Source: Octopus bimaculoides
Taxonomy: Eukaryota
DNA length: 59,062 bases
Direction of reading: 5' to 3'
Assembly: GCF_001194135.2 (NCBI RefSeq)
Contig: NC_068986.1
Coordinates: forward strand, 21,407,030 to 21,466,091
The position numbers and the translations under genes are program-made. A model generated the notes under the pieces. It worked only from the letters and a program-made list of their open reading frames with translations, was not told the origin of the DNA and did no database searches. Shown in pieces: positions 18,989 through 40,022 of the stretch; within the stretch, counting starts at the first letter, position 1, and each line of letters begins with the position of its first letter.

Positions 18989-19155
18989 TTCTTAAATGTT
19001 TTTTCCAAATCCTTGATTTCTTTCCTGGAAAATTCTTTAAATTCCGTGTAAGGATTGAAAACTTTGGCCGTTGCCTGTACAGTCTCACCAGCCTCAAGAG
19101 CATCACTAATATTGATGCGGCGAGTTAGCAGAGTGGCCAACTCGTCTGTAGCCAT
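18989..19155 (-). CDS. EFHD2: First coding exon (copy A) of an EF-hand domain-containing protein D (swiprosin-1 / EFHD1-2 family); partial CDS
   Basis: Translation MATDELATLLTRRINISDALEAGETVQATAKVFNPYTEFKEFSRKEIKDLEKTFK+AA, then a GTAAGT donor (18988-18983); start context aatcATGG. Matches the human EFHD2 N-terminus as I recall it (MATDELATKLSRR...VFNPYTEFKEFSRKQIKDMEKMFKQ), with the intron just before EF-hand 1. Confidence 0.93.
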
Positions 19156-19281
19156 GATTATGAATGATGATGTTAGACAGACAAATTAAAATCAAATTGA
19201 ACTTATGTGAAATACCTAAGTGGTATGGTTGTTGTCGTCGTATATCCCAGAAAGTAAAGTAGAAAGAAATCCGCTGCGTCT

Positions 19282-19620
19282 GAAAGCGAGTTACTTATTC
19301 CTTCTATGTGTTGTCACGCTACTTGATATTAACATTATTGTTGTCAGAGAGGCAACTCCTCGTTGCTAAAAGAACCAATAAATCTTTCTCTATTATAGCA
19401 AGAATTAACGTTACCAATTAAATCTTTCTCTCTCTTTCTTACAGCCTTTCTAGTCTCTGTTCCACACTGGTCTACTACACAAGGTTGTTTCTCTTTCTAT
19501 TTCGCTCGCCCGCGCGTTTTCTTTCTCCCTTCTTCTCTCACTCTTTCTCACTTTCTCTCTCCATCCCTCCCACCCTCTCTATGTTTCACTTTACTTCTTT
19601 GTTTACCCCCTCCCCTCTTC
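19282..19620 (-). promoter_or_regulatory. Putative 5'UTR/promoter of EFHD2 exon 1A: conserved ~80-nt block plus GA/CT-rich tract
   Basis: 19282-19360 aligns with 40057-40137 upstream of copy B (gaaagcga.ttactt / cac.ctactt.atattaa / agaggcaactcct). A CT-rich tract follows at about 19420-19620. Confidence 0.55.
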
Positions 19621-35096: not shown

Positions 35097-37042
35097 TCTG
35101 GTTAATGTTTACAATATTACTCGGAAACGAAAACAAATAAAATAGTGCAACAGGTGTAAAAAAAATGTGTACGAAATGAATATGAAAACAAAAATGCGAG
35201 CAAAGCAACGGGATGGAGTTTTTCTCGCATAACTTTTAGGAAAATGAAGGGGTTTTTTTAATGAAATGTTATGTAAATACCTTTCAAATGGCATACATTA
35301 TGGTTATAAAGAAATTTGTGGGGAATTTTTTTCTGAAGGGGTGGGGAGAGGACTTTCGGAAAATTCTCAAGATCCGATTCCCCCTCCCCCCATAACTTTG
35401 AGGAAAATGGATATCGTTTAATGAAATTTTTTCTAAATACCTTTCAAACGGTATACCTTTCTATTCACACTCAAAATATTGAACGTCTATGGGGAAGCCT
35501 GAAAAAAATGTATTGTTCGACCCAGAAGCGAAGTTTTTCCCACGAGAGTTCCGGATCCCAGTAATGAACTCATTTGCATACAGCCAATCAGAGCTCCCCT
35601 TGACCTTGTTGTCAAGTTAACAAACACACTCTATCTAGCAAGTAAACTCAAGACTAAGAGTTGTGTTGTAAATCGACCGATCGCCAGGTTATGCCTGATT
35701 TTAGAAGGAGACAAGTAATTAGATAGATTTGCATCTATACCTATTATCGGATTTTGTAAGGGCTCCATATGGTAAAGACGTGGATGGGGAAAATGTGGGT
35801 AGAGGGTGATGTGCTAGCAACCCTCTCCCTTACTGTTTTACAAAGTAAACAACAACACAACCACGCAGAGGCAGCCATGGTTGAAACAAGAACAAGAAGC
35901 ATTATTAAAAGAGAAAAGAAGCATGGTCATTCCTTACCCAAGTGAATTTATCTTATCGCCCATCACTTGTTATGCGCTCATAAATCAGTTTGATATTTGA
36001 GCTCTGATTGGCTGTATGCAAATTAGTTCATAACTGGGGTCCGGAACTCTCGTGGGGAAAAGATTTCGCGACCTGGAATGAGATCTAGCTACTTTTCATT
36101 TGGGCCATCTCACCGCCAACCCAGCGACTTCATAAGTTTCCTTTGGAGGCTGCAAGACTATACACATGTTTCGGATGACACCGAAGAATGTATACCGGTT
36201 CTCGATGTCGTTCACCAAATAACTCCCTGGCGCAGTTTTTATATTGTAAAACATTCTTCTTACCCCCAGCTAGGCTTATGCTTTAAAACATTCAATACAG
36301 ATCTTCCGACACCCTTTAGGCTTGTTAAGTTGCTTACTGATGACTGAGAGAACCTGCAGTAATTAACCGAAAATATTAAACAAATAAGGAAGGTATCAGA
36401 GGGTCGTGAGATATGCTAAAAACAACAGCTAAATTGCCCTTATCTTTTTTTTTATAGTAAAACTATAATCAACACTATATTTATGAATTTGTTTCTCTCA
36501 CCATGTTACATGGGATCTTTTTTTAAACCTTTTTCTATTACTCGAACAAAATATATATATGCATCTTTTTTTTTTTTACTCTTTTACTCGTTTCAGCCAT
36601 GCGGCTGTGGTCATGCTGGAGCACTACCATGGAAAAAATAATTGCTGCGGGTAGGATATATAAGTTTATACATATCTAATTTTTTTTTTTTTCAAACTTT
36701 TTTGCATTACACTCAAGCAAAAAAAATAATTCATGAATTTCTTTCTCTTCAAAAGTCCTCTCTCCACCCTAATCGGAAAAGATTTTCCCCACAAATTTCT
36801 TTATAATTGTAATGTATGCCGTTTGAAAGGTATTTATATAAGATTTCATTGAAAGATATCCGTTTTCCTCAAAGTTACGGGGAAAAAACTCGGATCTTGT
36901 GAATTTTCCGAAAGTCCTCTCCCCACCTCACTCCGTTGCTTTGCGCGGATTTTTGTTTTCATATTCGTTTCATACACATTTTTTACACCCGTTCTACAAT
37001 TTTTTTTTTCGTTTTCGGGTAATATTGTAAACATTAACCAGA
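35097..37042. mobile_element. ~1.95-kb foldback element with ~300-bp modular TIRs, containing a second inverted-repeat element (35521-36076)
   Basis: tctggttaatgtttacaatattac.cg.aaacgaaaa at the left is mirrored at 37007-37042. Inner TIRs ttcccacgagagttccgga.cccagt.atgaact.atttgcatacagccaatcagagctc are mirrored at 35999-36060. Confidence 0.85.
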
Positions 37043-39855
37043 CAAATTTCCTTCTAACACACACACATATATACACACTGATACCATACATTTATACATA
37101 CCTGTCTACGTACTTGAGTGTGTATGCATGTGTGTGTTTGTGCATGATGACAGAATGGATGCAAGTTAATGCATTCAAACGCGAGAAAAACAAAAGTACT
37201 TTATACAAAATGTTGAATGGTATATTTAATTGCAGCTGGCTAACTGGGAAGACCTGAAATGTGAAAATCAGAACGCCAGTCGAGAAACTTCAGCATCAGT
37301 TAAGTGCATGTGTGTTGTACGATAAGATGTGGAGCAGGTTGCCCTGATTAGATAATGATGGGACGATTTATTTAGGCGCAGTGGTAATGATGGTTTGATA
37401 AAGACTGAGCATTACGGTGTGAATGAGACCAAGAATATTTGCGCTTGTCAAGGATATAATAGATGTGGGTGGATACTAATGACTAGTATAAACAATTCGG
37501 CCTCAGGACCAGCAACGCCGGCAGGGAACTATTGCGTGAGCTAGAAGTTATGTAAGTTGAATTCACTACGAACAGGGAATTTAATGAGATTAGATAAATG
37601 TTTTCAATACAGACCGTGAGATAAAAACATTAAACTGAAGAATTACTCATTCAAATAGTTTGGTGATGACTGGTGGAGTTTGAAATACAGTAGAGAGAGA
37701 AGTCAAATTAATGAACAATAAGTAAAAGATACTCAGGGTTAAGAGTAACTGGAAGTCACTTTTGTTGATATTCAGATGAAAGGGTAAATGGTAAAGAGAG
37801 TGGCTTCTATAAACAAACAGACACTCTCTTTCATAGTATGCAGTGGGACCTGAAGTGATGAGATGGGTCTTTTCAGAACGGAACATGAGGTGCTGTTTAT
37901 GTTTATACATATAACCATTTTTGAAGATAGTAGAATAGTATTTGAAAAGGACTAGGCTACAATTTGTAGCACGTCAAAAATGATGTGTGGATAGTTCTAG
38001 ATTAGACCGCAGTCCACAGATGTTTGTAAAGAAAGTGAATTTCTAGCACAATATTCAGCAGCCCCTTGGAGCTCTGTACCTCCTTTTAACCAAATGCTGT
38101 TTTACAGTACCCTTCGTTTGTATTTTGGGGGTGAGGAGAAATTTAATCAAACAGAAGCTAATTTTGTGCAGTGATCTATTAACCACGATCCAACTGGATA
38201 GCATGTTAATGTTTATCAACATGCTATACAATTCAGCATACGCCTCCTCCTGGATATTTGCATGGACTGCTGTCCCATATGTAAATTTTTTATATAAATT
38301 ACTGAAGAGAGCGATGACTTAGAGAATGAAATTATAACGGTCTTCAGTGCATCATAAGTCACACATCTGCTAACACAATATCCAACTGATATTCTAATCC
38401 CAAAAAAGATAAAATATCGAGTTCAAATATTTCCAAAGAAAAATCACGATCCCTCTAAACGCCTAGTACCCTCCACAGTGCCCCTCTTGACATTAGCCAC
38501 GTGTTTGAGAGTTCAGAGTGGCCCCCAAGAGGACGTTACGCACCAAGTCAAGAACCATTGGTCTGGTGACCTTAACTGGGTTCTAAGGTAACATCTTTAT
38601 ATCTGTAGTCGGTTTTGATCGTGGATTAAGGAAGAGGAATTCGTAACTCTTGGTTTATTAACTACCAATCTGATTCCTGTAAGCAGAGCCAATAAAAAGG
38701 GAATTTACTTGGGAGCTCAAGAAATGCTTGCATGTATTGAAGACCAGCATTCACAGATATCAAAAGAAACTTTGCAATTCCTGATAATTATTCCTCTGGT
38801 AAGTTTTGTCTATAAACAATCCAGCTAGAAGTTAGTGCCCGTAAATGGGCCCTTTTGCAATCTTGTACTTGTCGGGGCATGTCATAAACTGGGAGCAAAA
38901 AGGATATGTATTTAACTGTTGTTTAGCTCCACATCAACTCTGATCGAGTAGCTTTATGATTAAAGGCATTCCAACTAAGACTATTTGATTTGATGGAGAT
39001 TTGGCTGCTATTTCTAACAAATCATACGACCACATAGAAGCTTTTGCGAGGGGTTATCGTGAATGCCTCTCGGCAAGTGGCCTACCCTCTTAATGGAATC
39101 ATTTACAATTTTCCCCTCTCAAAACCGGTTTATTCCACAAACCGGTACTCAGTCCCAAAATCCGCGGAAAATGAACTCTGCAAAAAGACATGCAAAAGCC
39201 ATGTGTTAGTGTTAAACTAACCACCACCTCCCCGAATAAAAATTCTATACGGCTGCTCTGTCTCTCGGAAATATCGACAAATCGCCTTCTCGTCACAACC
39301 CTGTTGTCTTTTTTAAAAGGCAAAAAAAAAAAAAAAAGAATCATGACAATGTACTCCCAAAAAGACGGGGTGGTCACAGCTGGAATGCCATCGATCATAG
39401 GTCAGCTCGATCCAAGTCAACAGGTTAATAATTATCAACAACATGGTGTTTTGTCGTGGCATCTTTTTCTTTATGTTATACATTTGTGATCTATTCTTCC
39501 CGTTTGTTTAATTCACACAGACATTAAATTATAGCCCCGACTTCCTCTCACTTAGATTACCTAAATCTGTACTGTGTAGGTTCATACGAATCGTTCTCTC
39601 TTTCTACCTATCTATCTATCTATATATATATACATACATACATACATACATACATACATACATACATACATACATACATACAAACAAACACCTACATAGA
39701 CAGATACATAAAGAGAGAGAGATAAACAGAAATCAATATCGATAATGAATCAATAGTGAACCGTATCGTCGACAGGCAAAAAGGTTAAGAAGATTAATAT
39801 ACACTTTGAAAAACATGAAGCGACGACGATTGTAACAGAAGAAAACGAAACTTAC

Positions 39856-40022
39856 TTATTAAATAATTTTTCCCGCTCCTTTATTTCTTGTCTTGTAAAT
39901 TCTTTAAATTCCGTATAAGGGTTGAAAATTTTAGACGTCGTGTCTACAGTTTCACCAGCGTCGATAGCATCGTTGATATCGTTGCGACGAGTCAACAGGT
40001 TGGACAGCTCTTCTGTAGCCAT
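39856..40022 (-). CDS. EFHD2: First coding exon (copy B) of an EFHD2/swiprosin-1-like protein; partial CDS
   Basis: Translation MATEELSNLLTRRNDINDAIDAGETVDTTSKIFNPYTEFKEFTRQEIKEREKLFN+AA, then GTAAGT (39855-39850). Same length, phase and aatcATGG context as copy A; 37/55 aa identical with no indels or stops. Confidence 0.92.

What the first reader, a model, noticed from the sequence alone, without database searches (positions are those of the whole stretch)
18989..40022. Twin EFHD2/swiprosin first exons with no private downstream exons: candidate variable-first-exon / constant-body gene
Seen: two minus-strand ATG-containing exons 20.9 kb apart, both 167 nt with a phase-2 GTAAGT donor. Reading both intervals by eye, I found no sequence for the EF-hand loops, the GAPQTH linker or the FFEAK/coiled-coil C-terminus, either between B and A (39855-19156) or in the 19 kb after A. 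Known: EFHD1/2 proteins need those parts, encoded by further exons in vertebrates. Between B and A there is only one gap (338 N, flanked by AT microsatellite), an unlikely home for the rest of a gene. Inference: an exon-plus-promoter duplication created alternative N-termini spliced to one shared EF-hand/coiled-coil body beyond the window's left edge.
Basis: partly seen in the sequence, partly recalled or inferred. Interest (0 to 1): 0.8.

Follow-up and report, generated by a model that had tools for sequence, protein, structure and literature searches.

The report
Two alternative first exons of octopus EFHD2
The two look-alike exons are real and are alternative first exons of a single Octopus bimaculoides EF-hand gene (EFHD2-like), but public annotation already lists both protein isoforms, so this is an ordinary, already catalogued case of an old exon-plus-promoter duplication.

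Summary
The window is Octopus bimaculoides chromosome CM046606.1 at 100% identity. Exon A (18989-19155) and exon B (39856-40022) lie on the minus strand. Each is 167 nt with an ATG and an AA|GTAAGT phase-2 donor. They share 78% of nucleotides and 68% of residues.

No EF-hand or C-terminal exons lie in the window. A single set of three body exons lies 11.3-15.9 kb beyond the left edge. Splicing either first exon to that set reproduces XP_014778636.1 (A) and XP_014778637.1 (B) exactly.

The O. sinensis locus fetched here has no gaps. It is colinear, shows the same B...A...one-body layout, and carries the same pair of annotated isoforms. The 338-N gap is intronic. In O. sinensis it corresponds to about 350 nt of TA repeat plus a repeat fragment.

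B is not a dead copy. It is intact in three octopus species, is 97% conserved against 80-84% for its flanks, and shows 12 synonymous versus 5 non-synonymous differences (P=1e-5). Both exons keep a shared ~90-nt upstream block.

The Argonauta locus fetched shows only one first exon, so the age of the duplication is unresolved. No RNA reads were examined here. Novelty: already known from annotation, though I found no paper on it. Interest is low.

The parts
39856..40022 (-). Alternative first exon B. The coding part is 167 nt, from the ATG at 40022 to the donor AA|GTAAGT after 39856. It encodes MATEELSNLLTRRNDINDAIDAGETVDTTSKIFNPYTEFKEFTRQEIKEREKLFN(K).
   Evidence: It is identical to residues 1-56 of XP_014778637.1 (P0266). 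Orthologues are intact in O. sinensis and in a third octopus species. It is under purifying selection.
18989..19155 (-). Alternative first exon A. The coding part is 167 nt, from the ATG at 19155 to the donor AA|GTAAGT after 18989. It encodes MATDELATLLTRRINISDALEAGETVQATAKVFNPYTEFKEFSRKEIKDLEKTFK(K). It is the more conserved, ancestral-looking copy.
   Evidence: It is identical to residues 1-56 of XP_014778636.1 (P0371). It is 80% identical to the Argonauta exon 1 and 82% to that of a more distant species, against 68.5% and 61% for B.
40049..40137 (-). Conserved block upstream of exon B, a candidate core promoter or 5' UTR element. It is paralogous to 19274-19360.
   Evidence: It is 77.5% identical to the block upstream of A. 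It aligns across the A and B copies of three species.
19274..19360 (-). Conserved block upstream of exon A, a candidate core promoter or 5' UTR element. It is paralogous to 40049-40137.
   Evidence: The 700 nt on either side of A are about 95% identical between O. bimaculoides and O. sinensis.
8147..8190 (-). Possible third, unrelated alternative first exon. It has 44 coding nt (MVASSVSWESFWLI(K)) and an AA|GTAAGT phase-2 donor. It appears in the model XP_014778638.1 'isoform X3', which in the cluster listing has only an older protein set as its source.
   Evidence: The O. sinensis equivalent carries a roughly 60-nt insertion yet stays open in frame (read by eye). It has weak similarity to an interspersed repeat.
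25019..25356 (.). Assembly gap (338 N) inside the intron between B and A, flanked by TA microsatellite.
   Evidence: Its flanks are colinear with O. sinensis, where the interval is 349 nt without EFHD coding.
1..18988 (-). Proximal part of the ~30-kb intron between exon A and the shared exon 2. Exon 2 lies 11.3 kb beyond window position 1. This stretch contains gaps at 15066-15609 and 16905-17296.

Best explanation
This is one EFHD (swiprosin-type) gene of Octopus bimaculoides with two paralogous, mutually exclusive first exons. An old tandem duplication copied exon 1 together with about 200-350 nt of its upstream sequence. B now lies 20.9 kb upstream of A.

Each copy has its own start codon, a consensus phase-2 donor, and (inferred) its own promoter. 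Neither is known to have an acceptor in normal use. A transcript starting at B therefore splices over A to the single shared exon 2, and a transcript starting at A splices to the same acceptor.

The products are two 194-aa proteins with identical residues 57-194: both Ca-binding loops, the linker and the C-terminal coiled coil. They differ at 18 of the first 56 residues. Those residues cover the flexible N-terminus, the flanks of the FNPYTEFKEF segment, and the entering helix of EF-hand 1.

Shown here: the anatomy, the single body, conservation of both exons, and identity to the deposited isoforms. Inferred: that each exon has its own promoter, and that the two are used in different tissues or conditions.
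For: - The window is 100% identical to GCA_001194135.2 CM046606.1.
- There is a unique AG/GT solution for exons 2-4. With exon B it translates exactly to the deposited isoform P0266. Exon A is the same length and phase and equals residues 1-56 of P0371, whose residues 57-194 are identical to P0266.
- Both isoforms are deposited for O. bimaculoides: XP_014778636.1/A0A0L8GSR9 and XP_014778637.1/A0A0L8GRG9. Both are also deposited for O. sinensis: XP_029637331.1 and XP_029637332.1. The O. vulgaris model CAI9724309.1 also joins B to the shared body.
- The gap-free O. sinensis locus has B, then A 21.9 kb downstream, then one body 41.9 kb further on, and no other EFHD-like coding.
- B is intact, with a GTAAGT donor, in three species.
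- Between O. bimaculoides and O. sinensis, exon B is 162/167 identical against 80-84% for its flanks (P about 1e-7 to 1e-10). Against the third species it shows 12 synonymous and 5 non-synonymous differences (P=1e-5).
- A versus B gives dN 0.18, dS 0.73 and omega 0.24.
- Nucleotide similarity between the two copies is limited to the exon, 6 nt of intron, and an upstream block that is conserved in all six copies.
- Residues from about 19-22 onward align to the EFHD1 and EFHD2 core crystal structures 7clt and 5i2l (E=6e-49 and 6e-44). The Pfam EF-hand match begins at residue 49-52. The alternative exon therefore changes ordered structure.
Against: - I examined no RNA-seq, Iso-Seq or CAGE data. 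Transcript support is taken from annotated models, and I could not inspect their evidence lines.
- No transcript-derived contig encoding either octopus isoform was on record in the searched collections.
- Between O. bimaculoides and O. sinensis, B shows 4 non-synonymous and 1 synonymous change. That is too few events to test, but it is not a signature of constraint on that short branch.
- Sequence around B is much less conserved than around A (80-84% vs about 95%), so B may be a minor promoter.
- The O. vulgaris model enters B through an internal acceptor from an exon about 11 kb upstream. B might therefore not always act as a first exon.
Confidence: 0.88

Rival explanations
1. B is an orphan relic of a partial duplication. 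It is no longer transcribed or spliced productively, and the B-type isoform in the databases is a prediction artefact.
For: I saw no RNA data directly. The sequence around B is less conserved than around A. The O. bimaculoides vs O. sinensis comparison of B has 4 non-synonymous and 1 synonymous change. No transcript contig encoding the B isoform was found.
Against: The reading frame, the ATG context and the GTAAGT donor are intact in three species despite 21% divergence across the locus. Against the third species there are 12 synonymous and 5 non-synonymous differences (P=1e-5). The exon is far better conserved than its flanks. B-type models exist in the deposited annotations of three species.
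Confidence: 0.07
2. A and B are ordinary tandem paralogous genes. B has its own EF-hand and coiled-coil exons, hidden in assembly gaps or interleaved with those of A.
For: The O. bimaculoides locus has several gaps: 338, 392, 544 and 1758 N.
Against: The N-free O. sinensis locus (90.8 kb) is colinear with O. bimaculoides and contains only one set of body exons. The gap equivalents there are 349, 395 and 829 nt of repeat sequence. The bodies of the two deposited isoforms are identical at every residue in each species.
Confidence: 0.02
3. The twin exons are an assembly artefact, either an uncollapsed haplotype or a mis-join.
For: The assembly is gap-rich and repeat-rich around the locus.
Against: The copies are only 78% identical, which is far beyond allelic divergence. 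The same two copies occur in the same order and spacing in an independent O. sinensis assembly. They also occur on separate contigs from a third species.
Confidence: 0.01

Closest known systems
Deposited gene models for octopus 'EF-hand domain-containing protein D2' isoforms X1 and X2: O. bimaculoides XP_014778637.1 / XP_014778636.1 (UniProt A0A0L8GRG9 / A0A0L8GSR9) and O. sinensis XP_029637332.1 / XP_029637331.1
   Same: This is the same object. The N-termini equal exons B and A of the window residue for residue, and the bodies are identical.
   Different: Nothing differs in sequence. The records do not comment on the paralogy of the first exons, their age or their constraint. I found no paper that does.
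Variable-first-exon / constant-body genes made by tandem exon duplication, such as the clustered protocadherins and UGT1A (from general knowledge)
   Same: Paralogous first exons sit in tandem. Each has its own start codon and donor and a conserved upstream element, and each joins one shared set of downstream exons.
   Different: There are only two paralogous copies (plus one unrelated short candidate) rather than a large array. The variable part is 56 residues of a small cytosolic Ca-binding protein, not a whole extracellular or substrate-binding domain. Promoter choice was not tested.
Vertebrate EFHD1 / EFHD2 (swiprosin-2 / swiprosin-1) paralogue pair
   Same: The family and domain plan are the same: the FNPYTEFKEF segment, two EF-hands, a linker helix and a C-terminal coiled coil. 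The octopus protein aligns to 7clt (EFHD1) and 5i2l (EFHD2) at E=6e-49 and 6e-44. The position and phase of the exon-1 boundary match those seen in the exon-1-only ORFs of many animals.
   Different: Vertebrates diversified by whole-gene duplication. Octopus diversified only exon 1 and keeps a single body. The octopus gene is co-orthologous to both vertebrate genes, so 'EFHD2' is a naming convention.
Alternative splicing that arises by tandem exon duplication, i.e. mutually exclusive exons (a concept described by Kondrashov and Koonin and by Letunic and colleagues, cited from memory)
   Same: The duplicated exons are equal in length and phase and are used one at a time.
   Different: These are first exons chosen by transcription start, not internal exons chosen by the spliceosome.

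Membership tests
EFHD / swiprosin family | Conserved N-terminal core segment (FNPYTEFKEF) followed by the entering helix of EF-hand 1, encoded at the end of exon 1 | tested here: met
   Both exons contain FNPYTEFKEF. The best hits are EFHD exon-1 ORFs and EFHD2-like proteins. They align to the EFHD1/2 crystal structures from residue about 19-22.
EFHD / swiprosin family | Two EF-hands, a linker (GAPQTH) and an FFEAK / coiled-coil C-terminus in the same protein | tested here: met
   These are not in the window. They are present in exons 2-4 of the same gene, 11.3-15.9 kb beyond the left edge. Pfam EF-hand_7 scores 46.7-49.3 bits against a cut-off of 30. AIF-1 (PF21008) scores 48.4-49.6 against a cut-off of 50, just below.
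Alternative (variable) first exons with a constant body | Two or more first exons, each with its own ATG and splice donor, in tandem upstream of a single set of downstream exons | tested here: met
Alternative (variable) first exons with a constant body | Each first exon is joined in mRNA directly to the same acceptor | not testable with these tools
   There is no read-level RNA data. The support is indirect: deposited isoform models in three species equal the predicted splice products.
Alternative (variable) first exons with a constant body | Each first exon has its own promoter | tested here: inconclusive
   A paralogous ~90-nt upstream block is conserved in the A and B copies of three species. 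No TSS data are available and no CpG island is present. The available promoter scanner is bacterial and was not used.
Tandem exon duplication origin | The exons are paralogous (significant similarity, same length and phase) and both are maintained by selection | tested here: met
   130/167 nt identical, equal length and phase. Omega between A and B is 0.24. For B between species there are 12 synonymous and 5 non-synonymous differences, P=1e-5.

The most novel reading that the evidence does not exclude
The exon-plus-promoter duplication may be an octopod-lineage innovation that split the EFHD gene's roles at the exon level. On this reading, two promoters with different tissue or activity profiles deliver proteins whose EF-hand 1 entering helix differs: A has Leu50/Thr53 and B has Arg50/Leu53, and B's pattern is kept in three species. 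This would tune Ca2+ response or actin bundling, and would be a one-gene counterpart of the vertebrate EFHD1/EFHD2 split. The data do not exclude this. The data also do not exclude that the duplication predates the Argonauta split and was lost there.
Probability: 0.3. Interest if true: 0.35.

Novelty: already known. Interest (0 to 1): 0.15.

Why it matters
It matters little beyond annotation quality. The check shows that a reader working from raw sequence inferred the gene's architecture correctly. It also shows that the assembly gaps do not hide a second gene body. The modest biological point is that Octopus diversified the N-terminal 56 residues of its only swiprosin-type actin/Ca2+ protein by duplicating exon 1 with its upstream element. 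Both copies have been kept under purifying selection across at least three species. If the two promoters prove tissue-specific, this would be a tidy example of exon-level subfunctionalisation. The mechanism itself is textbook.

Tried and rejected
- Body exons inside the window. Only low-complexity AG-repeat matches appeared, around 46.3-46.7 kb and elsewhere. Rejected.
- Word-indexed protein searches with the 56-aa exons returned almost only exon-sized ORFs. A chimeric query, exon A plus a hemichordate/invertebrate body, was needed to pull out the full-length cephalopod proteins.
- Exact look-ups. The window's exon B ORF and O. sinensis P0368 were not on record. The O. vulgaris gene range exceeds 100 kb, so no DNA was returned.
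- Dating the duplication. An NJ bootstrap on the 167-nt exon put A with Argonauta in 66% of replicates and A with B in 33%. This is unresolved. The first support values were invalid because of rooting and were discarded. The Argonauta locus could be read only 10 kb upstream of its exon 1, whereas B lies about 21 kb upstream of A in Octopus.
- The third species (runs SRR11869384/85/90/94) could not be identified. A text search for the run prefix hit an unrelated paper.
- The tRNA scan, the Rfam scan and ORFs of at least 110 aa found nothing relevant in the window. CpG content showed no island at either exon.
- The literature searches for EFHD2 or swiprosin in octopus or cephalopods, and for the accession numbers, found nothing relevant.
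- Structure prediction was considered and skipped. The sequence alignment to solved EFHD1/2 cores already places residues 22-56 in ordered structure.
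Full report
**1. The observation**

On the minus strand, 18989-19155 (exon A) and 39856-40022 (exon B) are each 167 nt.
- Each starts with ATG in the context aATCATGGc and ends AA|GTAAGT. The intron therefore interrupts a codon after its second base (phase 2).
- They translate to MATDELATLLTRRINISDALEAGETVQATAKVFNPYTEFKEFSRKEIKDLEKTFK and MATEELSNLLTRRNDINDAIDAGETVDTTSKIFNPYTEFKEFTRQEIKEREKLFN.
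- They share 130/167 nt and 38/56 residues when the junction codon is counted.
- Database searches with exon A return EFHD exon-1 ORFs from many animals. Most end at the same point (...TFKK...MFKQ), so the exon boundary is ancient.

No EF-hand, linker or C-terminal exon was found anywhere in the window on either strand.

The one omission is that the 19 kb after A holds two more gaps, at 15066-15609 and 16905-17296.

**2. What the window is**

A search with exon A fused to an invertebrate EFHD body recovered full-length cephalopod proteins.
- P0266 (XP_014778637.1, O. bimaculoides 'EF-hand domain-containing protein D2 isoform X1') begins with exon B residue for residue.
- Its cluster mate P0371 (XP_014778636.1, 'isoform X2') begins with exon A.
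- The two are identical from residue 57 to 194.
- O. sinensis has the same pair, XP_029637331.1 (A-type) and XP_029637332.1 (B-type).
- An O. vulgaris model (CAI9724309.1) also joins B to the same body.

The genomic locus of P0266 is L006, 75.9 kb of GCA_001194135.2 CM046606.1. It matches the window at 100% identity in reverse orientation, with window x equal to L006 50023 - x.

**3. The gene**

L006 contains a single set of body exons. A brute-force search over AG/GT sites gave one solution:

| Exon | L006 coordinates |
|---|---|
| 2 | 61331-61478 |
| 3 | 63082-63219 |
| 4 | 65776-65907 |

- With exon B, this solution translates exactly to the deposited isoform P0266.
- Exon A has the same length and phase and equals residues 1-56 of P0371. 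P0371 has the same residues 57-194, so the same solution gives the A isoform.
- Exon 2 starts with A, which completes AA|A = Lys for both first exons.
- The body therefore begins 11.3 kb beyond the window's left edge. A 1758-N gap abuts that edge.
- A third, unrelated short first exon (MVASSVSWESFWLI(K)) sits at window 8147-8190 and again has an AA|GTAAGT phase-2 donor. It belongs to a model (XP_014778638.1) whose only listed source is an older protein set.

**4. The gap question**

The O. sinensis locus (L008, 90.8 kb) contains no N.
- It has B at 10001-10167, A at 31926-32092, and one body at 73.97-80.8 kb.
- It is colinear with O. bimaculoides from end to end.
- Even at E up to 20 the octopus body finds only the three true exons plus low-complexity noise.

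| Window gap | Length (N) | Interval between the aligned flanks in O. sinensis |
|---|---|---|
| 25019-25356 | 338 | 349 nt (TA microsatellite plus a repeat fragment) |
| 16905-17296 | 392 | 395 nt |
| 15066-15609 | 544 | 829 nt |

All three gaps are intronic and no reading frame crosses them. A hidden second gene body is therefore excluded for practical purposes.

**5. Is B alive?**

A third octopus species is represented by Logan contigs from runs SRR11869384/85/90/94. I could not identify the species.
- It carries an A-type exon (L002; locus 89% identical to the window).
- It also carries a B-type exon (L009; locus 79% identical over 2.8 kb).
- Both have intact frames, and the B-type donor reads GTAAGT.

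Evidence of constraint on B:
- Against that species, B shows 12 synonymous and 5 non-synonymous differences (dN 0.039, dS 0.48). The binomial P is 1e-5 under neutrality.
- Between O. bimaculoides and O. sinensis, exon B is 162/167 identical while its flanks are 80-84% identical (P=9e-8 to 9e-11).
- On that short branch B has 4 non-synonymous and 1 synonymous change. That is too few to interpret.
- A versus B gives dN 0.18, dS 0.73 and omega 0.24.

B is therefore a maintained coding exon, not a decaying relic.

A is the slower copy. It has 1-2 nt differences among the three species, and its flanks are about 95% conserved. It is also closer to outgroups: 80% to Argonauta and 82% to a more distant species, against 68.5% and 61% for B.

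**6. Extent and age of the duplication**

Detectable A/B similarity is confined to three pieces:
- the exon;
- 6 nt of intron;
- an upstream block (19274-19360 vs 40049-40137, 77.5% identical), separated from the exon by an indel.

That block aligns across all six A and B copies of the three species, but not with Argonauta or the more distant species. Its retention at dS about 0.7 argues that it is functional. The most economical reading is a promoter-proximal or 5'-UTR element, so the duplication took exon and promoter together. This step is inferred.

The Argonauta hians locus (L007, no N) has only one EFHD first exon in 10 kb upstream plus the 47.5-kb first intron. Its annotated gene range starts at that exon.

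An NJ bootstrap groups Argonauta with A in 66% of replicates and A with B in 33%. B's neighbourhood also evolves two to three times faster than A's. So it remains open whether the duplication predates the Argonauta split.

**7. What changes in the protein**

- The octopus protein aligns to the solved EFHD1 and EFHD2 core domains (7clt, 5i2l) from residue about 19-22.
- The Pfam EF-hand matches begin at residues 49-52.
- The alternative exon thus supplies the flexible N-terminus, the FNPYTEFKEF segment (invariant between A and B) and the entering helix of EF-hand 1. Both Ca loops are in the shared exon 2.
- A and B differ at 18 of 56 positions. In the helix, SRKEIKDLEKTFKK (A) contrasts with TRQEIKEREKLFNK (B).
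- By the canonical EF-hand helix pattern (general knowledge), A keeps a hydrophobic residue at position 50 (Leu) but not 53 (Thr). B does the reverse (Arg50, Leu/Ile53), and this is conserved in three species. Any functional consequence is speculation.

**8. Comparison and verdict**

This works like the variable-first-exon / constant-body genes (protocadherin clusters, UGT1A), at minimal scale. It fits the known route from tandem exon duplication to alternative isoforms. It is an exon-level parallel to the vertebrate EFHD1/EFHD2 gene pair.

The isoform pair has been in public protein databases for O. bimaculoides and O. sinensis under the accessions above. I found no paper that discusses it. 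I rate it already known and of low interest.

The main caveat is that I examined no RNA reads or transcription-start data, so the splice and promoter claims rest on deposited models and on conservation.

Noticed in passing
window 8147-8190 (-); L008 44426-44527: A short third candidate first exon (MVASSVSWESFWLI(K)) has the same AA|GTAAGT phase-2 donor. It appears in the model XP_014778638.1. In O. sinensis the equivalent has a roughly 60-nt insertion but, read by eye, stays open in frame to the same donor. It resembles an interspersed repeat weakly (76% over 51 nt to 27948-27997), so it may be a repeat-derived exon.
   Followed up: partly
window 10755-11169, 27146-27557, 27938-28399, 43725-44134, 50828-51253, 57267-57884: An interspersed repeat family of about 400-430 nt has copies 83-93% identical to one another and to further copies elsewhere in the locus (L006). 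It was not classified. No tRNA-like gene was found by ARAGORN and there was no Rfam hit.
   Followed up: no
window 51297-51359 (-): This stretch matches an upstream coding exon (QQLIQGFGDITEEKFELIHRR, 86% identical) of the O. vulgaris model CAI9724309.1. That model enters exon B through an internal acceptor (ctacag|A) 10 nt after the ATG. In O. bimaculoides the matching stretch is followed by GC, not GT, so the exon may not be usable here. The O. vulgaris model may be a read-through or an annotation artefact.
   Followed up: partly
window 18300-19850 vs 39150-40720: The 700 nt on either side of exon A are about 95% identical between O. bimaculoides and O. sinensis, whereas those around exon B are 80-84% identical. 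The same asymmetry (89% vs 79%) appears against a third species. Either there is strong regulatory constraint around A or the local substitution rates differ.
   Followed up: partly
window 19320-19345 and 40100-40125 (-), approximate positions inside the conserved upstream blocks: The conserved block upstream of both first exons contains an imperfect palindrome: GCAACGAGGAGTTGCC in A and GGCAAGGAGTTGCC in B. It is kept in all six copies of three species and is a candidate transcription-factor site. It was not tested.
   Followed up: no
P0003-P0008, P0023 (fish EFHD2-like exon-1 ORFs); human EFHD2 from memory: In vertebrate EFHD2 exon 1 the N-terminal motif (ATDELxxKLxRR...) occurs twice in tandem. 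HMMER reports two matched stretches for several vertebrate-length hits. So vertebrates duplicated the motif inside the exon, whereas Octopus duplicated the whole exon.
   Followed up: no
window 46300-47100 and 42730-42870: Long AG/GA and related microsatellites translate to E/R/K/G-rich or S/L/P-rich pseudo-ORFs of up to 268 aa. They give spurious weak tblastn matches to the EFHD coiled-coil tail.
   Followed up: yes
window 15066-15609 and 16905-17296; L006 50023-51780: Two more gaps lie in the intron after exon A, and a 1758-N gap starts immediately beyond window position 1. The O. sinensis sequence between the flanks of the two in-window gaps is 829 and 395 nt, and a body-exon search over the whole O. 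sinensis locus found nothing there.
   Followed up: yes
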